Shown: positions 35,263 to 48,165 of the stretch, piece after piece
How positions within the stretch are numbered: position 1 is the stretch's first letter
Layout of the letters: each line of letters opens with the position of its first letter
Virus record (IMG/VR): IMGVR_UViG_3300050120_000230
Coordinates: 124,001-188,000 of that record
Length of the DNA: 64,000 nucleotides
Reading direction: 5' to 3' (one strand)
Notes under the pieces: model-generated
Seen by the model: only the letters and a program-made list of their open reading frames with translations
The model's database searches: none
What the model was told of the DNA's origin: nothing
Position numbers and translations under genes: made by a program

Positions 35263-35264
35263 AT

Positions 35265-35338
35265 TGGCAGGGGTGGAGAGAATCGAACTCTCGTCTTGGG
35301 TTTTGGAGACCCCTACTCTACCATTGAGCTACACCCCT
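35265..35338 (-). tRNA. tRNA-Trp(CCA)
   Basis: Cloverleaf, loop CT-CCA-AA, CCA end. Confidence 0.93.
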
Positions 35339-35418
35339 ATTAGATAACTTGGGATACCACCGGTTGCAAATCAGGATATATACGTAATACTTACGTATTT
35401 CCGGGGGCTATCACGACA

Positions 35419-35688
35419 ATGACTACTCCATCTACGATCAACGGCGCCACTGTGACTATTGTCAGGATTGGCAAATCTCTCGTTTCCTTGCAGTCACAAA
35501 ATCTCGTCACACAACCCGCAAGCGCCGGGCAGATGTCCTTCCAGATCAATTGCGATTCGAAGCTGCTGATCGCGAACTCGAAGATCACGATTTTCTCTTC
35601 GACGTTCGGTGCGAAGATCGACAACGTCACCGTCCTCGCCGATCATTTCGGCGCGGGTAGTCACCAGATCACTGGCCACGTCATCTGA
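35419..35688 (+). CDS. Hypothetical protein
   Basis: 89-aa ORF inside the tRNA array, antisense to it. Confidence 0.6.
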   Translation: MTTPSTINGATVTIVRIGKSLVSLQSQNLVTQPASAGQMSFQINCDSKLLIANSKITIFSSTFGAKIDNVTVLADHFGAGSHQITGHVI

Positions 35689-35692
35689 ATTG

Positions 35693-35782
35693 AGAATCAG
35701 GTGGGACTCGAACCCACGGGGACAAGCTTCGCTTGTTACGGGGGTAAAAACCCCGCCCTCTCGCCGCTGAGGTGACTGATCC
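35693..35782 (-). tRNA. Atypical tRNA-Lys(TTT) with long variable arm
   Basis: Loop TT-TTT-AC, V-arm ACAAGC-GAA-GCTTGT, U73, no CCA. Confidence 0.7.
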
Positions 35783-35822
35783 ATTTATTGAACATTCGTA
35801 GAGATATCAATACTATTGGTTA

Positions 35823-36416
35823 ATGTTTTGTGAATTTTGTTCTGACTTGATTTCTTCTCGATATGGTTCTGGTCGTTTTTGTTCTTCCAAAAGTGCCAGA
35901 GGTTTCAGCACCAAAGCTAGGCGCGCAGAGATCAATTCCAAGGTCAGCAAGAAATTATCGAATAGACCGTCTGGTCGAACGCTCGATTGCGTGACCATTT
36001 CTTTTCTGGCTGACAAACGACGTGAAAAACTCATGGAACTGCCATGGGAATCAATTGGCCTATACGCCAAAAAATCTCGCGTTCTGGGTGAACAAAATCA
36101 CCGGTGCAATGGATGCAACCTTGATGAATGGCGGGGCCAGCCGTTGGTTTTGGAAATCGAACATAAAGATGGCAATAACCAAAACAACGCCCGAGAAAAT
36201 CTCGAAGGCTTGTGTCCGAATTGCCATAGCCAAACGCCAACATGGCGTGGTCGTAACAAGGGTCGATCTAAATCAATCTCAGATCAAGAATTCATCGAAC
36301 ATCTGCAAGCTGCTAGCAGCATTCATCGCGCGCTGTTGAGCTTAGGTCTCTCAGCGAAGGGAACGAATTATAACCGTGCGAGAACTCTCATCCAATCACA
36401 TGGCATTTCTATGTGA
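35823..36416 (+). CDS. HNH homing endonuclease
   Basis: CNGC...LEIEHKDGNNQNN..ENL..LCPNCHSQT. Confidence 0.92.
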   Translation: MFCEFCSDLISSRYGSGRFCSSKSARGFSTKARRAEINSKVSKKLSNRPSGRTLDCVTISFLADKRREKLMELPWESIGLYAKKSRVLGEQNHRCNGCNLDEWRGQPLVLEIEHKDGNNQNNARENLEGLCPNCHSQTPTWRGRNKGRSKSISDQEFIEHLQAASSIHRALLSLGLSAKGTNYNRARTLIQSHGISM

Positions 36417-36492
36417 TGGTGAACCCCCTCGGATTTGAACCGAGAATCTCCTCCTTAAAAGGGAGTTGCATTAACCGTTATGCTAGGGGTCC
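36417..36492 (-). tRNA. tRNA-Lys(TTT)
   Basis: Loop CT-TTT-AA, CCA end. Confidence 0.9.
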
Positions 36493-36493
36493 G

Positions 36494-36634
36494 TTAGAAA
36501 GTAGCATTCAGAGGTGAATTCATCTCGGGATATTCTGTCGCGAGAACAGACCCTTCATATGTTCCCCAGCCAACGAAAGCCAGAACTAAAGCAATGATTG
36601 TGGTGCCGAGCGCGATTTTGAATGTCTTTTGCAT
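36494..36634 (-). CDS. Small membrane protein inside the tRNA operon
   Basis: MQKTFKIALGTTIIALVLAFVGWG..., 46 aa, not in the ORF track. Confidence 0.5.
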   Translation of the reverse strand: MQKTFKIALGTTIIALVLAFVGWGTYEGSVLATEYPEMNSPLNATF

Positions 36635-36678
36635 AGCAACAATTTATCTCTCTGAGATGTTGCGATGCAATATATTTG

Positions 36679-36762
36679 AGGGCGCGGTGGGACTCGAACC
36701 CACGGTGTGCTTACGCAAAAAGATTAAGAGTCTTCCCCCTTCGCCGCTCGGGACACGCGCCC
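36679..36762 (-). tRNA. Atypical tRNA-Lys(CTT) with long variable arm
   Basis: Loop CT-CTT-AA, V-arm TGC-GTAA-GCA, U73, no CCA. Confidence 0.75.
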
Positions 36763-36766
36763 ATGT

Positions 36767-36841
36767 TGGTGGATCGGGAGAGATTCGAACTCTCGACCTT
36801 GGGCTTAAGAGGCCCCTGCACTACCGCTGTGCTACCAATCC
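36767..36841 (-). tRNA. tRNA-Lys(CTT)
   Basis: Canonical cloverleaf, CCA end. Confidence 0.93.
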
Positions 36842-36845
36842 ATTG

Positions 36846-36933
36846 TAGTCCTGCTTGGATTCGAACCAAGATCACGCCCCGATCTGGGACTACGGATTAT
36901 AAATCCGACGCTCTGCCGTTGAGCTACAGGACC
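36846..36933 (-). tRNA. tRNA-Ile(TAT) with long variable arm
   Basis: Loop TT-TAT-AA, V-arm GTCCC-AGATC-GGGGC. Confidence 0.8.
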
Positions 36934-36991
36934 AAAGGGTCTGCTGTAGCAGCGATATTCGTTTACTCATTTGGTCCTCCTCTTTTTGCTG

Positions 36992-37075
36992 TGCGCTCGG
37001 CTGGGCTCGAACCAGCAAGACCTTCCGGCCGCTCCGTTTTAAGTGGAGTGTGGCTACCAGTTTCACCACGAGCGC
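36992..37075 (-). tRNA. tRNA-Leu(TAA)
   Basis: Type II cloverleaf, loop CT-TAA-AA. Confidence 0.9.
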
Positions 37076-37080
37076 ATGAT

Positions 37081-37162
37081 TGGTGCCCCTCCTCGGATTC
37101 GAACCGAGATGCTTTCGCGCCAGATTTTGAATCTGGTGTGTCTACCGTTCCACCAGAGGGGC
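37081..37162 (-). tRNA. tRNA-Leu(CAA)
   Basis: Type II cloverleaf, CCA end. Confidence 0.93.
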
Positions 37163-37205
37163 ATAGAAACCTGAAGATCACATGGCGTGAACCTCAAGTC
37201 CATAT

Positions 37206-37287
37206 TGGTGCGGATGGAGGGAATCGAACCCCCACGCTTTCGCAACAGATTCTAAATCTGCCGTGGCTACCGTTACACCACATCCGC
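37206..37287 (-). tRNA. tRNA-Leu(TAG)
   Basis: Type II cloverleaf, CCA end. Confidence 0.93.
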
Positions 37288-37295
37288 ATTGTAGT

Positions 37296-37382
37296 TGGTG
37301 CGAATAGCAGGACTCGAACCTGCACGGCCTTTCGGCCACTGACTTCTGAAGCCAGCGCGTCTACCTATTCCGCCATACTCGC
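37296..37382 (-). tRNA. tRNA-Leu(CAG)
   Basis: Type II cloverleaf, CCA end. Confidence 0.93.
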
Positions 37383-37390
37383 ATTGTATT

Positions 37391-37472
37391 TGGTGCCCAG
37401 AACAGGACTCGAACCTGCACGCCGAAGCAACATCCTCTCAGAATGCCGTGTCTACCGTTTCACCATCTGGGC
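37391..37472 (-). tRNA. tRNA-Leu(GAG)
   Basis: Type II cloverleaf, CCA end. Confidence 0.9.
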
Positions 37473-37480
37473 ATTGTAGT

Positions 37481-37556
37481 TGGCACAACCGACTGGGCTC
37501 GAACCAGTGGCCTCATCCTTCGGAGGGATGCGCTCTTCCAACTGAGCTACGGCTGT
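37481..37556 (-). tRNA. tRNA-Arg(CCG)
   Basis: Loop CT-CCG-AA, CCA end. Confidence 0.93.
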
Positions 37557-37568
37557 AAATGATGTGCT

Positions 37569-37645
37569 TGGCAGAGACGACAGGGATCGAACCTGTGACC
37601 TCCTGATTCGTAGTCAGGCGCTCGTTCCGGCTGAGCTACGCCTCT
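37569..37645 (-). tRNA. tRNA-Arg(ACG)
   Basis: Loop CT-ACG-AA, CCA end. Confidence 0.93.
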
Positions 37646-37670
37646 GCAAAGCACATCATCGAAGTGTGTT

Positions 37671-37746
37671 TGGCTGGAACGGAGGGGATCGAACCCACGA
37701 CCTTCAATTCCGCAAACTGACGCTCTTCCAACTGAGCTACGTCCCA
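37671..37746 (-). tRNA. tRNA-Arg(GCG)
   Basis: Loop TT-GCG-GA, CCA end; this anticodon is uncommon in bacteria. Confidence 0.85.
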
Positions 37747-37840
37747 GCAAAACACACTTTATCAACGCCCCCGACCCATGGAAAAGCCGGGGGCGCCTAT
37801 TCATCAACCTCACCGGTGGCGACCGGCGAAGCCTTGGATT

Positions 37841-37855
37841 CAATTGTCAAAGATC
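37841..37855 (-). promoter_or_regulatory. rrn-like boxA antitermination site
   Basis: GATCTTTGACAATTG between the attenuator and the first tRNA. Confidence 0.6.
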
Positions 37856-37886
37856 GGTTAAGGTTGAAGGGAAGAAAGCGAACAAG

Positions 37887-37919
37887 AAAAAACCCCGGAG
37901 GCGGTGGCCCTCGGGGTTC
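37887..37919 (-). terminator. Attenuator terminator of the minus-strand tRNA operon
   Basis: GAACCCCGAG-ggccaccgc-CTCCGGGGTT followed by a T-run. Confidence 0.85.
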
Positions 37920-37948
37920 GTGTAGCTCTGAAGATTTTGGGAAGGCTT

Positions 37949-38050
37949 TTAGCCGTTACTCCCACCATCACCATGCACACGACTCCCCGAGCCCGCCAAC
38001 CACTTCAGTCGGAGGGTTTTCAGTCGGAGAGTGGCGAGGCGCCGGTTCAT
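37949..38050 (-). CDS. Leader peptide of the Arg/Leu/Lys/Trp tRNA operon (MNRRLATLRLKTLRLKWLAGSGSRVHGDGGSNG)
   Basis: AAGGA RBS, 33 codons, 13 of residues 3-18 are R/L/K/W; overlaps the antiterminator arm. Confidence 0.8.
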   Translation of the reverse strand: MNRRLATLRLKTLRLKWLAGSGSRVHGDGGSNG

Positions 38051-38113
38051 GGAAAGGTTCAGAGTCCTTGGTGTTGGGTTGCAAACGCAGCAGTTGCCAC
38101 GTCGTTCAGATTT

Positions 38114-38145
38114 TATTTATCACCGATGTGCTGACCATCTGTCAA
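38114..38145 (-). promoter_or_regulatory. Composite TTGACA / ATAAATA promoter of the minus-strand tRNA operon
   Basis: TTGACA at 38145-38140 and ATAAATA at 38120-38114. Confidence 0.7.
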
Positions 38146-38171
38146 CATTCTTTTTTGTGGTGAACCAAAAA

Positions 38172-38435
38172 TTATCTGATGGCGGCTTCCTTGCCGCCCA
38201 TTTTGGTGTAGAGCCGCTCGGCCGTCGCCAAGCTCTCGCGTCGGCTGATGGGCTGATAAGCCCAGTTGCCTTTGTGGTCTTTACTGAACACAACGTAGTA
38301 GGGCGACGGCTTTCCATTCCGAGACACATTTTCGGCGCGAGCCAGCGCATATCGCCCATCGCTCTTGAGAATAGTCCAGCTTGGGGTCGATTGCATCGTG
38401 CTTTCGACGAGGTTCATTAGGTCACGCATTCTCAT
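38172..38435 (-). CDS. Hypothetical late protein
   Basis: MRMRDLMNLVES start, CTAAATA at 38441. Confidence 0.65.
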   Translation of the reverse strand: MRMRDLMNLVESTMQSTPSWTILKSDGRYALARAENVSRNGKPSPYYVVFSKDHKGNWAYQPISRRESLATAERLYTKMGGKEAAIR

Positions 38436-38458
38436 GACGGTATTTAGCGGCTGACCGA

Positions 38459-38857
38459 TCATGACCACACGATCTTGAACAGCAGGCGATCTTCGTCTCG
38501 GCTGAAGCAGAAATAGGTCATCCAAATCGAATGTGATCCGATCAGAGGTGAATCTCTTTTTTTCCGGCGAGTGCAAGAGAAGGCGGCCCAAGGCCCGAAG
38601 GCCATCGTCGCCAACATGGGCATTTCATCCAAAAACCGTTCGTTTTGGAACGTCGGCGTGGCCCATCGATAGTTGAGTTTGTTGTCCCGCACGCATTCAA
38701 GCGCCGTTCTGAGATGAATGGGCGAAGAGTGTGAAACTTCGTAGTCGGTTCTGTTTTTCGCGTGCAGATCGATGTAACCGGAGGGGATCATGGAGAACTC
38801 TTGCTCTCCCCCGAAAGATTGTTGAACGACGCGCACCCAATTTCGTTTCCGCTTCAT
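38459..38857 (-). CDS. Hypothetical protein, FxxxxDAxxFKLxW family
   Basis: FSRDEDRLLFKIVWS. Confidence 0.65.
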   Translation of the reverse strand: MKRKRNWVRVVQQSFGGEQEFSMIPSGYIDLHAKNRTDYEVSHSSPIHLRTALECVRDNKLNYRWATPTFQNERFLDEMPMLATMAFGPWAAFSCTRRKKRDSPLIGSHSIWMTYFCFSRDEDRLLFKIVWS

Positions 38858-39075
38858 GAGGTGGGGTAGGCTTTGAGCAGTTCCTCGAACATGTAGCCGA
38901 AGCACGAATCCCACGTCTGACCAGACGGGCCGACTTCGTTACGAAGAGCTTGTCGAACTGCTCTATCGGCTTCCCAGACGGCGATGTGTGCGAGCGCCTT
39001 GGCAAGCGTCGGTTCTTTGCAGGCGATGGCGATCTGCTCTTGCAAGGGCGTAATGGTCATGACTTCGTCAGCCAT
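38854..39075 (-). CDS. Hypothetical protein
   Basis: Coupled small ORF. Confidence 0.6.
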   Translation of the reverse strand: MADEVMTITPLQEQIAIACKEPTLAKALAHIAVWEADRAVRQALRNEVGPSGQTWDSCFGYMFEELLKAYPTS

Positions 39076-39280
39076 TGATGATCCTCTGGATTTCTTCAGG
39101 ACTCTTATCCTGCCAAAAAGTCCCGGTCGGGTAGATATATTTTTTGAACATATCGGTAGCCCACGTCCCGCCGGGGTTCAGTAGGTCTTCGGACGTTGCG
39201 TTGATGACGCAGTCTGCTGTCGCCCAAGCTCTAGCCATTGCTTCTTCGTCGGCTGGATCGACGGCCGACACTTGGGTCAC
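39068..39280 (-). CDS. Hypothetical protein
   Basis: Coupled small ORF. Confidence 0.6.
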   Translation of the reverse strand: MTQVSAVDPADEEAMARAWATADCVINATSEDLLNPGGTWATDMFKKYIYPTGTFWQDKSPEEIQRIING

Positions 39281-40095
39281 AGCATGTCAGCCGTGATTTC
39301 GAGGGGAAGAAGCTTGGCGATGTAAGCTTTCTCAAGCTCCAAGGCGACCTGTCCGTGTTCGGTCTTCAACCAACTCGCGGCGCGATGTGCGGCCGAAATG
39401 TAGTGTGACACGCCGGGGTCGGCCTTGGCCTGTTGTTCCAAAAACTCCGGGTCAAGGTGGATGCGTTTGTCGGTGACGATGTTCACGGCCACGCGGTGTA
39501 GGCGCTTATCGAAGGTAGTCGTCCGTTTGATCTTGGTGGCCACGTTTTTGTCGGTGATGTCCCTGACCATATAGGTCGGCGTCGTCAACTCGGCGTTGAA
39601 GCCATGCCCGGCGGGGCGGGCGTCTTTATCGAAGATCGTCTTCCAGACTTCGCCACGATGTTTCCATTCTGCGCTCGGAACGGAACCGGGTCGTTCGTTG
39701 TCGTGCCACCAGAAGTGTTTCACGAGGCCAAGCCGCATGAACTTGTTGATCCACTCGTTGTGTTCGCAGCGAATGATGCCGTAGACGGCGCCGTCATAGG
39801 GGATGATGGAAACTTCGAAGTCGAAATCGTAGTCGGGGTTTCGGTATCCGGTTTTCTTGATCTCGCGTTGTGAATCCATCATCTCTTGATAGACGCCGGA
39901 CAGCACTCTGGTCGGCATGGGTTTTTCCCGTGCCAAGGCGTCGTCGATGTTTCTCTGACTGGTGTTCGCGTAGAGATCGAGAATCTTGGCGTGCGTGAGC
40001 GCCTTGAGAGTCTCGCGCCATTGGGCGAGCCCGCGTTCGATCTCGAATATGTTGGTGGTCGTGAACTTCACGCCCCGACCAATGTGCCAGCCCAT
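39277..40095 (-). CDS. Hypothetical protein
   Basis: Long ORF; start placed downstream of a TTGACG promoter near 40150. Confidence 0.75.
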   Translation of the reverse strand: MGWHIGRGVKFTTTNIFEIERGLAQWRETLKALTHAKILDLYANTSQRNIDDALAREKPMPTRVLSGVYQEMMDSQREIKKTGYRNPDYDFDFEVSIIPYDGAVYGIIRCEHNEWINKFMRLGLVKHFWWHDNERPGSVPSAEWKHRGEVWKTIFDKDARPAGHGFNAELTTPTYMVRDITDKNVATKIKRTTTFDKRLHRVAVNIVTDKRIHLDPEFLEQQAKADPGVSHYISAAHRAASWLKTEHGQVALELEKAYIAKLLPLEITADML

Positions 40096-40199
40096 CTGAT
40101 TCCACGCCCGCTTGTGATCGCGCGACCCTATAGGCCGTAATTTTTTCGTCAACCAGTTTGATCCGCATAAATATCGGACAGTCATTTGTCCGGTGAGTC

Positions 40200-41291
40200 A
40201 TGCCTCTTGTTAACAACGTCCGCACTACACCCGGCTCGGACGTAAAATTCTTCGCGAACACGACGCCCGATGCAAACTCGGTTGCTAAGGTCGATGCTGT
40301 CCCGACTGTTGCTGGACCTCCGGGTCCGCAAGGTGTTGGCATTCGTTCTATTACGATTTCCGACAGCGATGACCTTCTTTTCACTCTAACTGACAACACC
40401 ACTATTGACGCAGGTACTCTGCCGCCCGGTCCCACTGGTCCAACTGGACCTACTGGTGTCACTGGGCCGCCGGGTCCGATTGGTAATATCGGCCCACAGG
40501 GTATCAAGGGCGACAAAGGCGACACGGGTGCAACCGGCACGGCTGGTATTCCGGGTGTTCAAGGTCCGAAGGGCGACAAAGGCGACACTGGTCTGACGGG
40601 TTCCGTTGGCCCGGAAGGCGATCACGTCACCAACGCGGTCATCAACGGCTCGAATCACATCATCTTCACGCTGAGCGACAACAGCACTATCGACGCTGGT
40701 CTGTTGCCTCCCGGCCCGACCGGCAACGCAGGCCCCACGGGTCCGCAGGGTCCTCAAGGCGTGGACGTGGCGAACGCGACGATCAACGGTTCGAACCATC
40801 TCATCTTCACGCTGTCGAACTCGGCTGTTATCGATGCCGGTCCTTTGCCGCCCGGCCCCACGGGTGGCATTGGTCCGACTGGACCGGCTGGTCCCGCTGG
40901 TCCGCAAGGTAACGCTTCGACGGTGGCTGGCCCGGCCGGACCCGCAGGCCCGAACTTCGAAACGGTCGTCAATCTCAACACCGCCACCGGAACGGTCACG
41001 CTCGATCTTGGCTCGAACAGTTTCTACAATCTGACCCTCACCGGCAACGTCACCATCGCGTTCTCCAACACGGCGCTGACGACTCGTTCCTATACGGCCG
41101 TCGTTTCCATCAAACAGAATTCCAGCGGTGCGGGAACGTTCACGGTGACGTGGCCGGGAACCTGCAACACGCCGGGCAACGTCGTCTATTCGCAATCGAC
41201 GGGTCTGGGCGCCACTGACCTCTACACCGTGTTCACGATCAACGGCGGGGCGAGCTACTTCCTCAGCCAAATTGGGCAACTGTATTCCTAA
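40200..41291 (+). CDS. Collagen-like fibre protein
   Basis: GPxG triplets, repeated A.INGSNH.IFTLS..IDAG.LP module, late promoter at 40167. Confidence 0.88.
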   Translation: MPLVNNVRTTPGSDVKFFANTTPDANSVAKVDAVPTVAGPPGPQGVGIRSITISDSDDLLFTLTDNTTIDAGTLPPGPTGPTGPTGVTGPPGPIGNIGPQGIKGDKGDTGATGTAGIPGVQGPKGDKGDTGLTGSVGPEGDHVTNAVINGSNHIIFTLSDNSTIDAGLLPPGPTGNAGPTGPQGPQGVDVANATINGSNHLIFTLSNSAVIDAGPLPPGPTGGIGPTGPAGPAGPQGNASTVAGPAGPAGPNFETVVNLNTATGTVTLDLGSNSFYNLTLTGNVTIAFSNTALTTRSYTAVVSIKQNSSGAGTFTVTWPGTCNTPGNVVYSQSTGLGATDLYTVFTINGGASYFLSQIGQLYS

Positions 41292-42559: not shown

Positions 42560-42590
42560 TTGACGGGCTTTTGGTGCTCTGACATAAATA
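42560..42590 (+). promoter_or_regulatory. Composite TTGACG / ATAAATA promoter of the plus-strand tRNA operon
   Basis: TTGACG at 42560-42565 and ATAAATA at 42584-42590. Confidence 0.7.
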
Positions 42591-42642
42591 GGTTTCACAA
42601 ACGGGGTTCGCCCCGCCAATCGTTCTAGGAGACTGCTTTTCA

Positions 42643-42786
42643 ATGTCGCTCGTGGCCAACGCCATTTTCGCAACCATTACCACCGCGCCAATCGGCGTGG
42701 CGATGGCTGCTGGCGTTGTCGTGGCCGCCCCGATGTTCCAAAATCAGCCGGTTTTCCAACCCGTGACCGGAGGCCGTATGTCATAA
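42643..42786 (+). CDS. Leader peptide of the Ile/Val/Gln/Met/Pro/Asn/Ala/Thr/Phe tRNA operon (MSLVANAIFATITTAPIGVAMAAGVVVAAPMFQNQPVFQPVTGGRMS)
   Basis: AGGAGA RBS, 47 codons, 39 of them for amino acids whose tRNAs lie downstream. Confidence 0.85.
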   Translation: MSLVANAIFATITTAPIGVAMAAGVVVAAPMFQNQPVFQPVTGGRMS

Positions 42787-42814
42787 ACTGACCAAACTCA
42801 GTTTCAGACATGCG

Positions 42815-42848
42815 AAGCCTCCGAGGGGAAACCTCCGGGGGCTTTTTT
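42815..42848 (+). terminator. Attenuator terminator of the plus-strand tRNA operon
   Basis: AAGCCTCCGAGG-ggaaa-CCTCCGGGGGC followed by T6. Confidence 0.85.
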
Positions 42849-42891: not shown

Positions 42892-42966
42892 AGTCTCTTA
42901 GCTCAGCGGTAGAGCAGCGTCTTGATAAGGCGAAGGTCACTGGTTCAATCCCAGTAGGGACTACCA
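42892..42966 (+). tRNA. tRNA-Ile(GAT)
   Basis: Cloverleaf, CCA end. Confidence 0.93.
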
Positions 42967-42981
42967 AATCGCAGGACTTAC

Positions 42982-43056
42982 GGGCGAATAACTCAGCGGT
43001 AGAGTGCCTCTTTCACACGGAGGAAGCCGGGGGTTCGATCCCCTCTTCGCCCACCA
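42982..43056 (+). tRNA. tRNA-Val(CAC)
   Basis: Cloverleaf, CCA end. Confidence 0.93.
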
Positions 43057-43084
43057 CTACTCGATGAGTGACGTAGCTCATCAA

Positions 43085-43100
43085 GGTCTTTGACATCGTT
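43085..43100 (+). promoter_or_regulatory. rrn-like boxA antitermination site
   Basis: GGTCTTTGACATCGTT followed by a GC-rich hairpin. Confidence 0.6.
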
Positions 43101-43160
43101 GATAGCGTGAAATAACGGCCGCTCCCGTGATCGGGGGCGGCCGACTAAGAAGAGTTTTGC

Positions 43161-43233
43161 TGAGGATTAGTTCAGTTGGTAGAACGCCACACTCTGAATG
43201 TGGATGTCCGAGGTTCGAGTCCTTGATCCTCAG
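43161..43233 (+). tRNA. tRNA-Gln(CTG)
   Basis: Loop CT-CTG-AA; no CCA; acceptor stem extended by 13 bp. Confidence 0.88.
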
Positions 43234-43290
43234 CAAAACTCTTCTAGTTTTTTCACAAGCGTCCGTCGCAAGACGGCGCCTGTGAACTAA

Positions 43291-43375
43291 TGGGGAATGG
43301 TGTAATGGTAACATCCCTGACTTTGAATCAGGAGACGAGGAGTTTATGTAGGTTCGAGCCCTACTTCCCCAGCCA
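43291..43375 (+). tRNA. tRNA-Gln(TTG) with enlarged variable region
   Basis: Loop CT-TTG-AA, 15-nt variable region, CCA end. Confidence 0.85.
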
Positions 43376-43397
43376 TATTTTACGCGATGTGTTTTGG

Positions 43398-43475
43398 TGC
43401 GGGATGGTAGCAGTCTGGTAGCTCGTTAGCCTCATAAGCTAAAGGTCAGCGGTTCAAATCCGCTTCCCGCACCCA
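43398..43475 (+). tRNA. tRNA-Met(CAT), initiator-like body
   Basis: fMet-like D and T arms, but anticodon stem TTAGC/GCTAA lacks the three G-C pairs. Confidence 0.85.
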
Positions 43476-43495
43476 AACACATCGCGAACCTTTGA

Positions 43496-43573
43496 CGCGG
43501 GAAGGACAAGACAGTTAGTCACTAGCCTCATAAGCTAGACATCTGGCAGATGCGAGCACTGCTCCCGCACCCA
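43496..43573 (+). tRNA. Divergent tRNA-Met(CAT)-like gene
   Basis: C1xA72, loop CT-CAT-AA, non-canonical D and T loops, CCA end. Confidence 0.6.
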
Positions 43574-43648
43574 AACTTGGCACGGTGATGAACCGGTAAG
43601 TCCACAGAGTTATTGACTTGGTGCTACGAAAATCCGTAGCTGCAAGGT

Positions 43649-43981
43649 ATGAATGATCCACCCAAATTCGTCCGAGCCAGCCGCGAATATCGAGAGCATC
43701 TCATCGCTTTCGTTCAGCGGGCAGTTTGGGCGAGAGGACAGCCGGGTTTCGAGTTCGATGTGATGGGACGAACGTTCCTGATCGCGACCGAGACTGACTA
43801 CCTTCCGGGTTGGTCAGCCCGGCCTCTAACTCAACCGGACTTGATCTTCTTCAAAATGTTGTCGCGAGAACGCGATGACAACCACTGGGGCGCCTATTGG
43901 CGTCGCGGCAAGGGGATGAAGGTTTACGGAAACAGCACCGTATTCGAGCGGGACATGCTTTTCCTCAAGTTCGCAGAATAA
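43649..43981 (+). CDS. Hypothetical protein
   Basis: 110 aa, C-terminus FERDMLFLKF. Confidence 0.7.
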   Translation: MNDPPKFVRASREYREHLIAFVQRAVWARGQPGFEFDVMGRTFLIATETDYLPGWSARPLTQPDLIFFKMLSRERDDNHWGAYWRRGKGMKVYGNSTVFERDMLFLKFAE

Positions 43982-44146
43982 GCGAAATATCGTACAACAC
44001 GAAAAGCGATAAATCGTGCAAGGAATCATCGGGATCAGCGTCGGCAGTTCCTCCCCTCGGGGTGTGAAAACGGACCCCCGGTGACTTAGGCTAGAGGGTT
44101 GTAGGTGACCTGTATTTGACTGGGAACCTTCGTCCATGTGTTTTGT

Positions 44147-44223
44147 CAGGGTGTAGCTCAGTCTGGTAGAGTGGCGTCCTCGGATGGCGAGGGTCGCAGG
44201 TTCAAATCCTGCCACCCTGACCA
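44147..44223 (+). tRNA. tRNA-Pro(CGG)
   Basis: Loop CT-CGG-AT, CCA end. Confidence 0.9.
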
Positions 44224-44240
44224 AACACATGGTTCACCAA

Positions 44241-44393
44241 ATGGATGTGCTTTCCGAGAGGCATGTTGTGCATCGTCAAGAACAATCACCGTCCGTAGAG
44301 GGACGCCCGAGCGGGTTGCGGAGATTGTAGGAGACGATGTGCCAAGCGCGCGAACGGCTGCAAATCGGCATGTCTCGCGGTAAGCACATCCAT
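44241..44393 (+). ncRNA. Candidate ~150-nt rod-like ncRNA
   Basis: Ends pair (ATGGATGTGCTT..AAGCACATCCAT); internal stems GCATCGTC/GACGATGT and ACAATC/GATTGT. Confidence 0.5.
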
Positions 44394-44395
44394 GA

Positions 44396-44471
44396 TGGAT
44401 AGTAGCTCAGTTGGTAGAGCTTTCGGTTGTTACCCGAATGGTCGCAGGTTCGAGCCCTGCCTATCCAGCCA
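44396..44471 (+). tRNA. tRNA-Asn(GTT), variant loop
   Basis: Loop TT-GTT-AC, CCA end. Confidence 0.9.
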
Positions 44472-44490
44472 AAATGACCTTCGGGTCTGA

Positions 44491-44565
44491 TTGGACGTAG
44501 CACAATGGTAGTGCAACTCCCTGTTAAGGAGAAGGTTGTAGGTTCGAGTCCTACCGTCCGAGCCA
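44491..44565 (+). tRNA. tRNA-Asn(GTT)
   Basis: Loop CT-GTT-AA, CCA end. Confidence 0.92.
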
Positions 44566-44655
44566 TTTCTGGGTGGGCTGCAACCCCCAACTTCATCCAT
44601 CGGGTGAAGAGGTGAGACGCACAAAGCGCGTCTCTGACAAAGCGCAGCACATCAT

Positions 44656-44731
44656 GGGGCCATAGCTCAGTTGGTAGAGCGATTCCTCGGCAGGGAATAG
44701 GTCGCCGGTTCGACTCCGGCTGGCTCCACCA
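44656..44731 (+). tRNA. tRNA-Ala(GGC)
   Basis: G3:U70, loop TC-GGC-AG (C33), CCA end. Confidence 0.88.
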
Positions 44732-44837
44732 TTAAAGAAAGCCCCGCTGTTTCCAGCGAGGCTCCCTAGACCGAATCCACCACCGCACCGAAGCGCGGAC
44801 ATCAAAGGTGGACATCGTCACAAGGGATGTCAAGACC

Positions 44838-44887
44838 CGCTGTCCAAGGCTTGGACGGCACTCGCTGTCCAAGGCTTGGACAGCACT
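44838..44887. repeat. Tandem 25-bp hairpin repeat
   Basis: CGCTGTCCAAGGCTTGGAC(G/A)GCACT x2. Confidence 0.85.
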
Positions 44888-44984
44888 CCGCACGGTGATG
44901 AGCCGATAAGTCGGCAGATTTTGCCCACCAAAAAAGGCCCCGGCGAACCGGGGCCTTGATGGCACTGCACCGAAGTGCGGATGC

Positions 44985-45182
44985 TTAGGCGGTTTCGGCG
45001 TCCGAGCGGGTCGCGTATTCGGCCTTCAGGGATTCGAGGATCGACTGCTTGGCGGTGGCGTCGGTGACCGACGTTTCGCCGAGTTCGCGTTCGACCTTGG
45101 AAATGGCGTTCTTGATGTGCGGGGTTGCCATCTTCGACACCGGGGTTTCCGTGGTGCCGGACTTCCAGACTGCTTCAGCCAC
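44985..45182 (-). CDS. Hypothetical protein
   Basis: 65 aa, GGAGG RBS; M.T.HI.NAI motif; followed by a terminator. Confidence 0.7.
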   Translation of the reverse strand: MAEAVWKSGTTETPVSKMATPHIKNAISKVERELGETSVTDATAKQSILESLKAEYATRSDAETA

Positions 45183-45304
45183 AAGGGCCTCCTTGGTAGG
45201 TGGGTGGGAGTGCTAACCGGTTTGGTTAACGAAAACCATATATCCACCCCTGCGGCGTCATGTCAACAGCACAAAATCGTGCACTGCTCGTTGAGGGAAA
45301 ACAC

Positions 45305-45378
45305 GGGGTAATAGCTCAATGGTCGAGCACCGGCTTCGCAAGTCGGGGATCAGGGTTCGATTCCCTGTTACTCCACCA
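45305..45378 (+). tRNA. tRNA-Ala(CGC)
   Basis: G3:U70, CCA end. Confidence 0.92.
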
Positions 45379-45403
45379 AACATAAATAGTTTCAACTACA
45401 TAT

Positions 45404-45479
45404 GCTGTCTTAGCTCAGTTGGTAGAGCGCCGTATTGGTAATGCGGAGGTGGTGGGTTCGATCCCCGCAGTCAGCACCA
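45404..45479 (+). tRNA. tRNA-Thr(GGT)
   Basis: Cloverleaf, CCA end. Confidence 0.93.
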
Positions 45480-45482
45480 TTT

Positions 45483-45559
45483 CAGGGTATAGCGCAGCAT
45501 GGTAGCGCGTCACGTCGGGAACGTGAAGGTCGCAGGTTCAAATCCTGCTATCCTGACCA
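45483..45559 (+). tRNA. tRNA-Pro(GGG)
   Basis: Loop TC-GGG-AA (C33, A37), CCA end. Confidence 0.88.
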
Positions 45560-45565
45560 ATTAGG

Positions 45566-45871
45566 TCAATCCATACAGAACGGATTGGCGATGTTCGTCA
45601 GCGGCACAGTGTCCAAGATGATCGGGTTTTTGAAGAACTCGGACGTAAATTGATGCGAACCATTCGGGTTCATATATCGACGAGTTGCGGCCGTTTGGGC
45701 TCCCTTGACGGTTTTGAATACGCCGCTGAACCACATGATTTTATCAGCATCGCGTGGTGAGGTAACGCCGTACTGCCAAACGGTCATACCTTTCGGGTGT
45801 TCGATCCCTCTGGCATAGAACTTCTGCTCAATGGGAGCGTCATTCTCCGTGATGATTTCTCTCATACGCAT
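45566..45871 (-). CDS. Hypothetical late protein
   Basis: MRMREIITEND start, CTAAATA at 45877. Confidence 0.65.
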   Translation of the reverse strand: MRMREIITENDAPIEQKFYARGIEHPKGMTVWQYGVTSPRDADKIMWFSGVFKTVKGAQTAATRRYMNPNGSHQFTSEFFKNPIILDTVPLTNIANPFCMD

Positions 45872-45904
45872 ATGAATATTTAGGCCGCATGGCCAAACAG
45901 ACAT

Positions 45905-45981
45905 CGGGGTGTAGCTCAGCTTGATAGAGCATCCGGTTTGGGACCGGAGGGTCGGAGGTTTGAGTCCTCTCGCCCCGACCA
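45905..45981 (+). tRNA. tRNA-Pro(TGG)
   Basis: Loop TT-TGG-GA, CCA end. Confidence 0.92.
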
Positions 45982-46010
45982 ATTCAGAGACCTTCCCAAA
46001 GGGTCTCTAC

Positions 46011-46087
46011 GGTAATGTAGCTCAGTCAGGTAGAGCAGCGGGCTCATAACTCGCGTGTCGCTGGTTCGATCCCAGCCATTACCACCA
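46011..46087 (+). tRNA. tRNA(CAT), elongator Met or Ile2
   Basis: Loop CT-CAT-AA, A73, CCA end. Confidence 0.9.
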
Positions 46088-46088
46088 C

Positions 46089-46163
46089 GGACGATTAACT
46101 CAGCGGTAGAGTGCCTCTATGACATGGAGGAAGCCACTGGTTCGATCCCAGTATCGTCCACCA
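46089..46163 (+). tRNA. tRNA-Val(GAC)
   Basis: Loop AT-GAC-AT, CCA end. Confidence 0.9.
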
Positions 46164-46225
46164 ATTTACTTGACGAAACGCCCGTCCATGAGATCATATG
46201 TTGATCTTGCAAAGGGAGGGCATCC

Positions 46226-46501
46226 ATGACGACTGTGAAACTCTCCGAAGCGGAACACAACGCTCTCTCACTTCTGGTTCGCTCGGGCGGCTCGATCCTC
46301 ACGTCGGCCATTCCCGATAAGAACGAGAAGGACGTGTTTGACAACGTCGAGGCAGGCATCAAGGTCTACGTGAAACTTGAGACCCGTGGTCTGGTTGTCG
46401 TGACCGAGGAAGAGCCGTTCGAACTTGAAGACGGCACCGAGTTCCAGTTCACGAACGAAGTCTACATCACCGACGAAGGTCGGCACGCTATCAACCGCTA
46501 A
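46226..46501 (+). CDS. Hypothetical protein
   Basis: 91 aa, GGAGG RBS. Confidence 0.75.
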   Translation: MTTVKLSEAEHNALSLLVRSGGSILTSAIPDKNEKDVFDNVEAGIKVYVKLETRGLVVVTEEEPFELEDGTEFQFTNEVYITDEGRHAINR

Positions 46502-46564
46502 CAGGCCACATATGGCCTATTAGGCGCCGGAAACGGTTCTAATAGGCCAACTATGGCCTCTTAT

Positions 46565-46639
46565 GCTTGGGTAGCTCAGGGGTAGAGCAGTGGGCTGAAA
46601 ATCCGCGTGTCGTTGGTTCGATTCCAACTCCAAGCACCA
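46565..46639 (+). tRNA. tRNA-Phe(GAA)
   Basis: Loop CT-GAA-AA, CCA end. Confidence 0.93.
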
Positions 46640-46809
46640 TTTTGGTTATTTTGACCGCAAGGTAGATCATACCGCCCGGCCAAAGCAAACCGCCCCACAA
46701 AACTTGGCACAGAAATGTGCACAAGTCGAAGTGGTTGGATTTGATCTCTATGACCTGAAGAAGGCCCCAGAAGATCAATCCAATCAAAGAGTAAACAATC
46801 CATGGGCTC

Positions 46810-47940
46810 ATGCCCATATTTAGAGAGGAACGGTCCCTTGGAGTTTCACGGCTAAGCCCAGAGCGCCTTAATCGGTATCTGGCACTGCAAGATTTGACCG
46901 ACGCATCGTCGGGCGAACACGCAATCAACCTCGTGCTGGACAAGCTGGTAACGGCAATTGAGCAATGGTCGGGCCTCAAGGCAGACATCGTTCGGTCCAC
47001 TCCTATCGTTTCCGTTCGGGACAACTACGACCGGCTCTACTATGAGCCGGACGCGGTCGCACGCTCTGCGCGCTATTCCCACTACGTTGACGATGAGCAC
47101 ATTCTTCGCACCCACACGACGGCGGCCATTCCCGGCCTGCTGACGGAGACCACGGCCGACCGGCTGATGGTTCTACCGGGTCTTGTCTATCGCCGCGATG
47201 TGATGGATCGGATGCATGTGGGAGAACCGCACCAAGTCGATCTCTGGGTCGCTAGGCGGTCAAGGCTCCGTCGTGATGATCTGTTGAAGATGATCGGCGC
47301 GGTTCTCAACGCGATCCTGCCCGGCTGCGAATACCGCTGCAACGAGACAATCCATCCATACACAGTAAATGGCTTGGAGGTCGAGGTTCGTGTGGACGAC
47401 CGGTGGATAGAGGTGCTCGAATGTGGGGAAATCCATCCGTGGCTTTTGAACGACAACGGCTTGCCTAGTCAGGAGTGGTCGGGCTTGGCGATGGGGCTGG
47501 GCCTAGACCGCCTTGTAATGCTCCTGAAGGGCATGGACGACATTCGGCTGCTTCGCAGCACGGATGCTCGTATTGCCCGCCAGATGGCTTCCCTGAGCCC
47601 CTACGAGGCTGTTTCGAACCAACCTATGACCAAGCGGGATATGTCGCTCACGGTGAGTGATCCTGACATCGAATTGATCGGAGATCGCATCCGGGTGGCG
47701 CTCGGTGATCGGGCTGACTGGTTGGAAGAGATCGTGGTCGTTTCGGCATCGAGTTGGGATGAAGTCCCGGCCGTGGCGAGGGAGCGTCTTGGGATGGCGC
47801 CTGAGCACACGAACCTGTTGCTGCGGCTCATCATGCGCTCACCGTCCGAGAGCATTCCGAAAGAGATCGCCAACGAAATCTACGACATAGTCTATGGCGA
47901 GCTTCACGAAGGATCGGCGGGGTATCAGCGTGTATCATAA
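46810..47940 (+). CDS. Single-chain PheRS-alpha-related class II ligase with C-terminal FDX-ACB-like domain
   Basis: LRTHTTA, motif 2 GLVYRRD..DR.H...PHQ.D, HPYT, W.EVLECG..HP, motif 3 GLAMGLGLDRL.ML..G..DIRLL, then RDMS domain. Confidence 0.88.
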   Translation: MPIFREERSLGVSRLSPERLNRYLALQDLTDASSGEHAINLVLDKLVTAIEQWSGLKADIVRSTPIVSVRDNYDRLYYEPDAVARSARYSHYVDDEHILRTHTTAAIPGLLTETTADRLMVLPGLVYRRDVMDRMHVGEPHQVDLWVARRSRLRRDDLLKMIGAVLNAILPGCEYRCNETIHPYTVNGLEVEVRVDDRWIEVLECGEIHPWLLNDNGLPSQEWSGLAMGLGLDRLVMLLKGMDDIRLLRSTDARIARQMASLSPYEAVSNQPMTKRDMSLTVSDPDIELIGDRIRVALGDRADWLEEIVVVSASSWDEVPAVARERLGMAPEHTNLLLRLIMRSPSESIPKEIANEIYDIVYGELHEGSAGYQRVS

Positions 47941-47958
47941 ACAAGACGGGAAGGCCCT

Positions 47959-48088
47959 TAATGCATCGTTTATGATGCACTACGGTCGATTTCACAGTCT
48001 AGTGCATCAGTTTTGATGCATTACGCAATTCGCCAAAAATGACGAGTTATGAACAAAAATAGCCCTAACTCGTCAAAATTGGCGAATT
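47959..48088. repeat. Two nested-palindrome inverted repeats
   Basis: 47959-48023 and 48027-48088; each arm is itself a quasi-palindrome; a third copy of the design lies at 46503-46559. Confidence 0.75.
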
Positions 48089-48090
48089 AT

Positions 48091-48165
48091 GTCGATGTAG
48101 CTTAGTGGCTAAAGCATCCGGTTGAAACCCGGAGATCGGCGGTTCGAACCCGCCCATCGGCACCA
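48091..48165 (+). tRNA. tRNA-Phe(GAA), variant
   Basis: Loop TT-GAA-AC, divergent body, CCA end. Confidence 0.9.

What the first reader, a model, noticed from the sequence alone, without database searches (positions are those of the whole stretch)
37887..38145. Ribosome-stalling attenuator whose leader peptide spells out the Arg/Leu/Lys/Trp tRNA operon
Seen: promoter (TTGACA plus ATAAATA), AAGGA RBS, then a 33-codon ORF at 38050-37949, MNRRLATLRLKTLRLKWLAGSGSRVHGDGGSNG. 13 of residues 3-18 are R/L/K/W, using CGG, CGC, CGA, CTC, CTG, TTG, AAA, AAG and TGG, the codons read by the downstream Arg(CCG/GCG/ACG), Leu(GAG/CAG/CAA), Lys(TTT/CTT) and Trp tRNAs (no TTA, CTA or ATA codon is used). The RNA has all three classical pairings: 1:2, ACTCTCCGA (38032-38024) with TCGGGGAGT; 2:3, CTCGGGGAGTCGTGT (37991-37977, codons 20-25) with ACACGAACCCCGAG (37923-37910); and 3:4, the terminator at 37919-37887. 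Established: trp/his/ilv-type attenuation logic. Inference: stalling on these codons, from starvation or anticodon-nuclease attack, frees segment 2 and turns on the matching phage tRNAs. I know of no description of this for phage tRNA operons, but could not search the literature.
Basis: partly seen in the sequence, partly recalled or inferred. Interest (0 to 1): 0.95.

Follow-up and report, generated by a model that had tools for sequence, protein, structure and literature searches.

The report
Codon-matched attenuators of phage tRNA arrays
In this huge phage and its relatives, each cluster of tRNA genes is preceded by a tiny translated leader built from the very codons those tRNAs read, followed by a switchable terminator. 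This looks like a demand sensor that turns phage tRNA production on when decoding of those codons slows, a use of attenuation I could not find described.

Summary
No experiment exists.

The main addition is that the unit is not unique.

- **Second unit in the window.** A copy with the same rare promoter heads the divergent tRNA array at 42560-42848. Of its 46 codons after the start, 37 are read by that array's tRNAs, and all 14 anticodons are represented.
- **Relatives.** Four related megaphage loci keep both leaders in frame.
- **Other leader types.** A more distant phage (L018) and an AT-rich megaphage (L020) carry five more leader types. Each spells its own array: Tyr/Asn/Phe/Val/Met/Trp/Ile, Arg/Gln/Asp, His/Lys/Phe/Trp, Ser/Arg, and Ile/Tyr/Gly/Ala/Glu.
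- **Statistics.** The combined p for four units is 2e-14. Among 548 small ORFs in the window, each of the two leaders ranks first for its own array's codon set.
- **Folding.** With a ribosome placed at each codon, the terminator is lost only while the ribosome sits in the matched-codon block.

Best reading: ribosome-mediated attenuation that gives demand-driven feedback on phage tRNA supply. Ten literature searches found no description. I rate it a new variant of a known kind, with high interest.

The parts
38114..38145 (-). Promoter of unit 1: TTGACA (38145-38140), a long spacer, then GATAAATA (38121-38114)
   Evidence: this pattern occurs only here and at 42560-42590 in 64 kb (expected 0.01). 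It is conserved in L006, L008, L014 and L021.
38084..38103 (-). Small 5' UTR hairpin of the leader transcript
   Evidence: It appears in the minimum-energy fold. The sequence is not conserved in relatives, so its role is uncertain.
38065..38069 (-). AAGGA, a Shine-Dalgarno-like motif 14 nt upstream of the ATG
   Evidence: CAAGGA is conserved in four relatives. The spacing is longer than the 3-7 nt seen at most other genes of the window with such a motif.
37949..38050 (-). Leader ORF 1: 33 codons plus a stop
   Evidence: Start, frame and stop are kept in L006, L008, L014 and L021, including an in-frame extra Leu codon in L021.
37997..38044 (-). Regulatory block, codons 3-18 (RRLATLRLKTLRLKWL): 13 of 16 codons are read by the Arg, Leu, Lys and Trp tRNAs downstream
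   Evidence: This is the stretch in which a stalled ribosome abolishes the terminator in the model. It is nearly invariant at the nucleotide level in relatives.
38024..38032 (-). Segment 1 (ACTCTCCGA), which pairs with segment 2. With the inner stem it forms the hairpin 38032-37983.
   Evidence: Minimum-energy fold.
37977..37991 (-). Segment 2 (codons 20-25), which pairs either with segment 1 or with segment 3 (the antiterminator)
   Evidence: L006 carries changes in both segment 2 and segment 3 and keeps an antiterminator in a shifted register.
37910..37923 (-). Segment 3, shared between the antiterminator and the 5' arm of the terminator
37887..37919 (-). Intrinsic terminator (3:4): an interrupted GC-rich stem of 12 pairs, -19.9 kcal/mol, followed by a U run
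   Evidence: It is conserved in all relatives.
37747..37886 (-). Conserved spacer between the terminator and the first tRNA. It holds a TTGACA-containing block, two hairpins (about 37832-37807 and 37796-37766) and GTGTGTTTTGC next to the tRNA. Function unexplained.
   Evidence: consensus fold with compensatory changes. L021 keeps two hairpins with different sequences.
35265..37746 (-). Regulated tRNA array 1: Arg x3, Leu x5, Ile(tat), Lys x4 and Trp
42560..42590 (+). Promoter of unit 2: TTGACG, spacer, then CATAAATA
42627..42631 (+). AGGAG, 11 nt upstream of the ATG of leader 2
   Evidence: It is conserved in relatives.
42643..42786 (+). Leader ORF 2: 47 codons plus a stop. Of the 46 codons after the start, 37 are read by the tRNAs of the + array, and all 14 anticodons are represented.
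   Evidence: In relatives it was called as a 46-47 aa gene.
42767..42774 (+). Antiterminator strand of unit 2: CCGGAGGC (codons 42-44), which pairs with GCCTCCG of the terminator's 5' arm
42814..42848 (+). Intrinsic terminator of unit 2 (-21.5 kcal/mol, U run), 44 nt before the first tRNA
   Evidence: It is nearly invariant in relatives.
42892..48165 (+). Regulated tRNA array 2: Ile, Val x2, Gln x2, Met x2, Pro x3, Asn x2, Ala x2, Thr and Phe x2, with embedded protein genes including a PheRS-like gene

Best explanation
Each of the two divergent tRNA arrays of this roughly 415 kb phage is one operon headed by a ribosome-mediated transcription attenuator.

**Proposed sequence of events for unit 1 (38145-37887, minus strand).**
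1. Transcription starts at a shared promoter type.
2. A short leader ORF is translated while the polymerase moves on.
3. The first half of the ORF is a block of codons read by the tRNAs encoded downstream.
4. If those codons are decoded fast, the ribosome runs through the block and over segment 2. The 3:4 terminator forms and the tRNA genes are not transcribed.
5. If decoding is slow because cognate charged tRNA is scarce, the ribosome stalls inside the block. It covers segment 1 and leaves segment 2 free to pair with segment 3. The terminator cannot form and the array is transcribed.
6. The phage tRNAs then made relieve the stall, so the circuit is negative feedback on decoding capacity for exactly those codons.

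**Shown from sequence:**
- the anatomy of the unit;
- the frame-specific codon match;
- the covariation of that match with tRNA content across phages;
- conservation of the ORF;
- the mutually exclusive pairings and their dependence on ribosome position.

**Inferred:**
- that the leader is translated;
- the sign of the response;
- the physiological trigger, which could be host shut-off, a mismatch between host tRNA pool and phage codon usage, amino-acid starvation or tRNA-cleaving defences.
For: 1. **Two units in the window.**
- They share a promoter pattern found nowhere else in 64 kb.
- Own-array codons: 14/32 (p = 0.0015) and 37/46 (p = 4e-8).
- Own array versus other array: Fisher p = 6e-7.
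- The enrichment is frame-specific, and each leader ranks first among 548 small ORFs for its own array's codon set.

2. **Covariation with tRNA content.**
- In L018 the leader before Tyr/Val/Ile/Met/Asn/Phe/Trp tRNAs has the block YRNFVNMNVVWNFI.
- In L018 the leader before Arg/Asp/Gln tRNAs has RQRRDQQQRDRQSDR.
- Combined p for four units is 2.4e-14. The correct leader-array pairing ranks 1 of 24 permutations.
- In the AT-rich megaphage L020, SRSRSSRS precedes Ser/Arg tRNAs (p = 3.5e-6).
- In L020, IYIGYIAEGGYEAG precedes Glu/Tyr/Gly/Ile(tat)/Ala tRNAs (p = 0.006).
- In L020, an H/K/F/W-rich block precedes His/Lys/Trp/Phe tRNAs.

3. **Conservation.**
- Both leaders keep start, frame and stop in L006/L009, L008, L014 and L021.
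- All five versions of leader 2 keep 36-37 of 45-46 codons in their own set, although the L021 peptide is strongly diverged.

4. **Structure.**
- With only the RNA 3' of a ribosome folded, P(terminator) for unit 1 is about 0 at A-site codons 4-16. It is at least 0.84 from codon 18 and at codons 1-2, and 0.96 without a ribosome.
- The same window is seen in L006, L008 and L014, in L018A and L018B and in L020i.
- Shuffled leaders rarely give it.
- In eight of nine units, the last codon at which a stalled ribosome still leaves the terminator's 5' arm pre-paired falls within a few codons of the end of the matched-codon block.

5. **Need for read-through.** In unit 2 only 44 nt separate the terminator from the first tRNA, with no promoter-like site. 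The array therefore depends on read-through.
Against: - There is no experimental evidence. The phage is an uncultured metagenomic contig.
- The Shine-Dalgarno-like motifs lie 14 and 11 nt from the start codons, longer than at the other genes with such a motif.
- Equilibrium folding of unit 2 is only partly switch-like, with P(terminator) between 0.06 and 0.8.
- Three units show no antiterminator at equilibrium: leader 1 of L021, L020ii and L020iii. Leader 1 of L021 and L020iii do show one before the 3' arm is made. L020ii stays ambiguous.
- Leader 1 does not sample CTA, TTA or ATA.
- Among close relatives, nonsynonymous changes in leader 2 are not clearly biased towards staying in the set. In each of the three pairwise comparisons, 3-4 changes stay in the set and 2-4 leave it, against a random expectation of 0.40 staying in.
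- Strong nucleotide conservation of leader 1 means few informative compensatory changes.
- The conserved 140 nt block after the unit 1 terminator is unexplained and might carry its own control.
Confidence: 0.8

Rival explanations
1. The leader is translated and its codon content is selected to match the array, but the read-out is not classical stall-induced antitermination. Examples would be leader translation controlling processing or stability of the precursor, protecting it from Rho, or a response with the opposite sign.
For: - L020ii shows no convincing antiterminator.
- Unit 2 is only partly switch-like at equilibrium.
- A conserved structured spacer of unknown role follows the unit 1 terminator.
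Against: - Every unit ends in a strong intrinsic terminator directly after the ORF.
- In eight of nine units an upstream segment competes for the terminator's 5' arm.
- That competition is lost once the ribosome passes the end of the matched block, or within a few codons of it. This positional match is what attenuation predicts.
Confidence: 0.1
2. The small ORFs are ordinary genes for micro-proteins (leader 2 would be a hydrophobic membrane peptide) or the units are small RNAs. Each would have its own promoter and terminator, and the tRNA arrays would be expressed independently.
For: - Leader 2 is rich in Ala, Val and Ile, like a membrane helix.
- Gene callers annotated it as a 46-47 aa gene.
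- Nucleotide conservation is high.
Against: - Seven leader types of very different chemistry (R/L/K/W, R/Q/D, S/R, H/K/F/W and others) each match their own array.
- The leader 2 peptide diverges in L021 while its composition stays at 80% in-set.
- Leu is nearly absent from the hydrophobic leader 2, and the Leu tRNAs sit in the other array.
- No promoter-like site lies between the unit 2 terminator and its first tRNA.
- No Rfam family matches the region.
Confidence: 0.05
3. The codon match is a coincidence of composition or of RNA-structure constraints on a non-coding leader.
For: Leader 1 contains an 11 nt direct repeat (38029-38019 and 38014-38004). This inflates the count of R/L/K codons. 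Its p-value taken alone is modest (0.0015).
Against: - The enrichment is frame-specific.
- Each of the two leaders ranks first among 548 small ORFs for its own array's codon set.
- The match is replicated in unrelated sequences and in an AT-rich genome.
- In-frame conservation includes an in-frame codon insertion.
Confidence: 0.02

Closest known systems
Leader-peptide transcription attenuators of enterobacterial amino-acid operons (trpL, hisL, leuL, thrL, pheL and the multivalent ilvL of ilvGMEDA)
   Same: A promoter, a short ORF with a block of regulatory codons, 1:2 / 2:3 / 3:4 alternative pairings and an intrinsic terminator before the regulated genes. thrL and ilvL also mix codons for several amino acids. 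(Established knowledge; background in PMC1183508 and PMC3082878.)
   Different: - The regulated products here are tRNAs, not biosynthetic enzymes.
- The leader samples up to 14 different anticodons and 9 amino acids.
- The element belongs to a phage.
- The feedback variable would be decoding capacity supplied by the operon itself.
- There is no sequence similarity.
pheST attenuator (pheM leader) of E. coli
   Same: Leader-peptide attenuation applied to a component of the translation apparatus that acts on the same tRNA. (My own knowledge.)
   Different: It controls a synthetase, uses a single amino acid and is a cellular gene.
T-box riboswitches
   Same: The same regulatory purpose: sensing the state of a specific tRNA to switch a terminator or antiterminator upstream of translation-supply genes.
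   Different: T-boxes bind uncharged tRNA directly through a specifier codon and the T-box sequence, with no ORF and no ribosome. No T-box or other Rfam family matches here.
Leaderless polycysteine short-ORF attenuators of mycobacteria (bioRxiv 10.1101/834739)
   Same: A short ORF that starts at or next to the transcription start and is enriched in codons for the sensed amino acid. The two L018 units have their ATG 5-6 nt after the -10 element.
   Different: They use a single amino acid, control cellular biosynthetic operons and are not reported upstream of tRNA genes.

Membership tests
Ribosome-mediated (leader-peptide) transcription attenuator | A short ORF with start and stop codons between a promoter and the regulated genes, on the same strand | tested here: met
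   The ORF is kept in frame in four relatives.
Ribosome-mediated (leader-peptide) transcription attenuator | A block of regulatory codons cognate to what the operon supplies | tested here: met
   the enrichment is frame-specific, both leaders rank first for their own codon set, and the match covaries with array content.
Ribosome-mediated (leader-peptide) transcription attenuator | An intrinsic terminator between the leader ORF and the regulated genes | tested here: met
   stems of -14 to -27 kcal/mol with U runs in all nine units.
Ribosome-mediated (leader-peptide) transcription attenuator | An antiterminator mutually exclusive with the terminator, whose formation depends on where the ribosome sits | tested here: met
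   For the flagged unit. The result holds in most other units and is ambiguous for L020ii.
Ribosome-mediated (leader-peptide) transcription attenuator | An anti-antiterminator (1:2) that overlaps the regulatory codons | tested here: met
   The hairpin 38032-37983 is in the minimum-energy fold. Relatives carry one or two mismatches in it.
Ribosome-mediated (leader-peptide) transcription attenuator | The leader is translated, and read-through responds to the supply of cognate charged tRNA | not testable with these tools
   This needs reporters, ribosome profiling, 3'-end mapping or in vitro coupled transcription-translation.
T-box riboswitch | Stem I with a specifier loop and the conserved T-box sequence | tested here: not met
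   The Rfam scan of 34000-50000 at E <= 1 returned only tRNAs and chance hits.
Independent small-protein gene | The amino-acid sequence, rather than the composition, is conserved, and its transcription is unrelated to its neighbours | tested here: not met
   The leader 2 peptide is diverged in L021 while its composition is retained. There is no promoter between the terminator and the tRNA in unit 2.

The most novel reading that the evidence does not exclude
Huge phages of at least two very different host backgrounds (GC 55% and GC 34%) regulate each tRNA array with a 'codon-sampler' leader peptide. This short ORF strings together the codons read by the array's own tRNAs and gates an intrinsic terminator, so the phage makes tRNAs only when the cell's decoding capacity for those codons falls. 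It would be a previously undescribed class of attenuator. It would measure tRNA supply rather than amino-acid supply, and could double as a sensor of host tRNA depletion or of tRNA-cleaving defences.
Probability: 0.6. Interest if true: 0.95.

Novelty: new variant of a known kind. Interest (0 to 1): 0.9.

Why it matters
- **An open question about phage tRNAs.** Why large phages carry tRNA arrays, and when they express them, is unsettled. Proposed reasons include codon-usage compensation, replacement of a degraded host pool and escape from anticodon nucleases. A leader that reads out decoding speed for exactly the array's codons would mean the phage measures need and supplies tRNAs on demand. 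This makes the competing ideas directly testable with reporters.
- **A wider scope for attenuation.** It would extend leader-peptide attenuation from amino-acid metabolism to non-coding RNA genes and to viruses.
- **Multivalent sensing.** One 47-codon ORF would sense up to 14 anticodons.
- **An annotation signature.** A matched short ORF followed by a terminator marks the boundaries of tRNA operons in uncultured phage genomes.
- **A compact sensor.** The units are natural sensors of tRNA availability that could be used as research tools.

Tried and rejected
**Searches for relatives.**
- Searches of the cultured and deposited phage collection with the leader region and with 20 kb around it found only tRNA matches.
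- IMG/VR searches with the two neighbouring proteins and with leader DNA found only the window's own contig, IMGVR_UViG_3300050120_000230.
- The 415 aa protein upstream of unit 2 has no homologue.
- An alignment of 15 homologues of the 302 aa protein was too diverse to back-translate.
- Exact-pattern scans of metagenome and genome contigs with the conserved core of leader 1 re-found only known relatives, or found nothing.
- Several loci reached through the PheRS-like protein were uninformative:
  - L013 and L024 are cellular.
  - L012 and L017 begin inside an array.
  - L022 (LR745206.1) has no tRNA in the fetched 41 kb.
  - L023 has its PheRS-like gene outside any array.

**Analyses that led nowhere.**
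- The 11 nt direct repeat in leader 1 occurs nowhere else in the window.
- The motif GCAYGGTGATG, shared with two array gaps, is not above chance.
- Column-wise counting of pair covariation on the five-sequence alignments was given up, because the alignments shift register at the terminator and the core is nearly invariant. Each homologue was folded on its own instead.
- A test of whether nonsynonymous changes preferentially stay in the codon set gave no clear signal among close relatives.

**Not possible.** The rest of the 415 kb contig could not be read, so I could not look for a third array (Gly, Ser, Asp, Glu, His, Tyr, Cys) with its own leader.

Full report
**Source and setting.** The window is part of IMGVR_UViG_3300050120_000230, a 415 kb viral contig. 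Loci fetched from it are 100% identical to the window. GC content is about 55%. The window holds 31 tRNA genes in two divergent arrays, one on the minus strand at 37746-35265 and one on the plus strand at 42892-48165. The finding lies at the head of the minus-strand array.

**Check of the observation.**
- The ORF is 38050-37949.
- 13 of residues 3-18 are R/L/K/W, with the listed codons.
- Segment 1 is 38032-38024, segment 2 is 37991-37977 and segment 3 is 37923-37910.
- The terminator is 37919-37887 and is followed by a U run.

The RNA 38112-37880 folds at -89 kcal/mol (z = -3.0), and the minimum-energy structure contains the 1:2 hairpin and the terminator. The only weak point is the AAGGA motif, which lies 14 nt from the ATG. 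The few other genes of the window with a Shine-Dalgarno-like motif mostly show 3-7 nt.

**A second, independent unit in the same window.** The region in front of the plus-strand array has the same anatomy:
- promoter TTGACG-spacer-CATAAATA at 42560-42590;
- a small GC hairpin;
- AGGAG at 42627-42631;
- a 47-codon ORF at 42643-42786;
- a strong terminator at 42814-42848;
- the first tRNA only 44 nt later.

The promoter pattern shared by the two units occurs nowhere else in the 64 kb, where 0.01 matches are expected. Leader 2 is made almost entirely of I, V, Q, M, P, N, A, T and F, which are exactly the amino acids of the plus-strand array.
- Of the 46 codons after the start, 37 are read by that array's tRNAs, against a background of 0.407 in the window's long ORFs (p = 4e-8).
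- Only 2 are read by the other array.
- Leader 1 has 14 of 32 own-array codons (background 0.194, p = 0.0015) and 7 from the other array.
- The own-versus-other table gives Fisher p = 6e-7.
- All 14 distinct anticodons of the plus-strand array have a Watson-Crick cognate codon in leader 2. For leader 1 the figure is 9 of 12, or 11 with wobble.
- The same DNA read in the other two frames gives 5-7 of 32 and 15-18 of 46.
- Among 548 ORFs of 25-60 codons in all six frames, leader 2 ranks first for the plus-strand set. Leader 1 has the densest 16-codon run for the minus-strand set.

**Relatives.** The cultured-phage collection and IMG/VR held no close relative of the flanking genes. Two other proteins led to syntenic loci. 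One is a PheRS-like protein that sits between the two tRNA-Phe genes. The other is the 302 aa protein between the two leaders.

| Locus | Source | Contig size |
|---|---|---|
| L006/L010, L007 and L009, L011 | soil metagenome contigs | 8-29 kb |
| L008 | NCBI assembly contig | 570 kb |
| L014 | JGI contig | 288 kb |
| L021 | IMG/VR contig | 578 kb |

The order of tRNA genes is largely conserved. Both leaders are present with the same promoter, start, frame, stop and terminator.
- In leader 1, codons 3-18 are nearly invariant at the nucleotide level, while the 5' UTR has diverged.
- L021 carries an in-frame extra Leu codon.
- All five versions of leader 2 keep 36-37 of 45-46 codons in their own array's set, although the L021 peptide is much changed.
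- Gene callers had already called leader 2 as a 46-47 aa gene in these contigs.

**Covariation with array content.** This is the decisive comparison. L018 is a 21.7 kb contig with 70% PheRS identity. It has differently composed arrays and two other leaders behind the same type of promoter, with the ATG only 5-6 nt after the -10 element. Across the four units, two in the window and two in L018, the enrichment on the diagonal is 2.0-2.5 fold and at most 1.56 off it. The correct assignment ranks first of 24 permutations, and the combined p is 2.4e-14.

L020 is a 508 kb IMG/VR contig with GC 34%, Bacteroidota-like TAnnTTTG promoter motifs and 47% PheRS identity. It has three more units. The sequence evidence therefore covers seven leader types in at least three lineages and two very different genome compositions.

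| Unit | Leader block | tRNAs downstream | Own-array codons |
|---|---|---|---|
| L018A | YRNFVNMNVVWNFI | Tyr, Val, Ile, Met, Asn, Phe, Trp | 17/30, p = 1e-4 |
| L018B | RQRRDQQQRDRQSDR | Arg, Asp, Gln | 15/33, p = 3e-4; all 5 anticodons covered |
| L020i | H/K/F/W-rich | His, Lys, Trp, Phe | 9/33, p = 0.07 |
| L020ii | SRSRSSRS | Ser, Arg | 8/21, p = 3.5e-6 |
| L020iii | IYIGYIAEGGYEAG (includes two ATA codons) | Glu, Tyr, Gly, Ile(tat), Ala | 14/30, p = 0.006 |

L020i also has many Ser codons, and a Ser tRNA lies further downstream.

**Mechanism.** I folded only the RNA 3' of a ribosome placed with its A site at each codon in turn, and computed the probability of the terminator helix.
- **Unit 1.** The probability is about 0 for codons 4-16, 0.63 at Trp17, and at least 0.84 from codon 18 and at codons 1-2. 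It is 0.96 without a ribosome. The stall-sensitive window is therefore the matched-codon block.
- **Other units.** The same behaviour is seen in the L006, L008 and L014 versions, in L018A (codons 11-15), in L018B (codons 10 and 14-15) and in L020i.
- **Shuffle control.** Dinucleotide-shuffled leaders placed in front of the same terminators rarely show it. For unit 1 the mean is 1.2 codons against 13 observed.
- **L006.** It has changes in both segment 2 and segment 3, and keeps an antiterminator in a shifted register.
- **Weaker cases.** Unit 2 is less switch-like at equilibrium. Leader 1 of L021, L020ii and L020iii show no equilibrium switch.
- **Kinetic measure.** I also asked whether the terminator's 5' arm is already paired upstream before its 3' arm has been made. 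This gives a step in eight of nine units. The step falls within a few codons of the end of the matched block:

| Unit | Step (last codon before the drop) | End of matched block |
|---|---|---|
| win- (unit 1) | 17 | 18 |
| win+ (unit 2) | 39 | 42 |
| L018A | 17 | 18 |
| L018B | 16 | 20 |
| L020iii | 20 | 18 |
| L021+ | 38 | 39 |

The G/S/R-rich tails of the leaders overlap segment 2 and vary in composition between relatives. I read them as shaped by RNA pairing rather than by sensing.

**Interpretation.** The best reading is a leader-peptide attenuator that couples transcription of each tRNA array to the speed at which its own codons are decoded. This gives negative feedback on tRNA supply.
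- Shown from sequence: the anatomy, the frame-specific match, the covariation, the conservation and the position-dependent alternative pairings.
- Inferred: translation of the leader, the sign of the response and the trigger.

The rivals are a codon-matched leader with a different read-out, independent micro-protein or small-RNA genes, and coincidence. They are weighed in their own sections. The last two are hard to reconcile.

**Comparison with what is known.** The logic is that of the trp/his/leu/thr/ilv/phe leaders and of the pheST attenuator. The purpose resembles that of T-boxes, but no T-box or other Rfam family is present. The L018 units resemble leaderless short-ORF attenuators (bioRxiv 10.1101/834739). 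What is new:
- the regulated genes are tRNAs;
- the sensing is multivalent;
- the element is viral;
- the loop is self-referential.

Ten full-text searches with varied terms found no description of leader peptides or attenuators in front of tRNA arrays. The library lacks most subscription journals, so this is absence of evidence only.

**Verdict.** I rate it a new variant of a known kind, with interest 0.9 and confidence 0.8 in the mechanism as stated.

Noticed in passing
window 46810-47940 (+): A single-chain PheRS-like protein (Pfam tRNA-synt_2d, E = 1e-34) is encoded between the two tRNA-Phe(gaa) genes inside the + array. Its homologues range from 92% to about 45% identity in other huge phage contigs and in Rhizobiales-like bacteria. 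It proved a useful marker for finding related tRNA arrays.
   Followed up: partly
window 37747-37886 (-): The 140 nt between the unit 1 terminator and tRNA-Arg is more conserved than the leader's 5' UTR. It holds a TTGACA-containing block, two hairpins with compensatory changes and GTGTGTTTTGC next to the tRNA. L021 keeps two hairpins with different sequences. Similar GTGTTTTG motifs precede tRNAs at 43387 and 44136. Function unknown; it could be a processing signal or a second control element.
   Followed up: partly
window 35823-36416 (+): An HNH endonuclease gene lies between two tRNA-Lys(ttt) genes, antisense to the array. L020 and L014 also have an HNH gene next to their Lys tRNAs.
   Followed up: no
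window 49093-49295 (+): Two tandem 99 nt copies, 86% identical and each ending in CCA, lie just beyond the + array. ARAGORN does not call them as tRNAs and they have no Rfam match. They may be an unrecognised tRNA-like or other small RNA.
   Followed up: no
window 35692-35782, 36845-36933, 36678-36762, 43291-43375: Four tRNAs are unusually long for their type: Lys(ttt) 91 nt, Ile(tat) 89 nt, Lys(ctt) 85 nt and Gln(ttg) 85 nt. At the position of Ile(tat), relatives have a tRNA with anticodon cat. L014 has a tRNA with a four-base anticodon call there, and L020 has one with an eight-base anticodon loop.
   Followed up: no
L018 13930-14050 (+): Between the terminator of unit B and tRNA-Arg lies a piece with a 7 bp acceptor-like stem, a GGTTCGAATCC T-arm and a 3' GCCA. 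ARAGORN does not call it, so it may be a tRNA-like element or a decayed tRNA.
   Followed up: no
L020 1300-1345, 6240-6275, 13440-13470: The three leader units of the AT-rich megaphage sit behind TAnnTTTG motifs, which are typical of Bacteroidota promoters (my own knowledge). This suggests a host quite different from that of the window's phage.
   Followed up: no
window 43580-43602 and 44890-44912 (+): A 23 nt motif (GCACGGTGATGA..CCG.TAAGTC), 91% identical between its two copies, occurs in two gaps of the + array. Its first 11 nt also occur in leader 1 at 37976-37966. That 11 nt core is not above chance on its own.
   Followed up: partly
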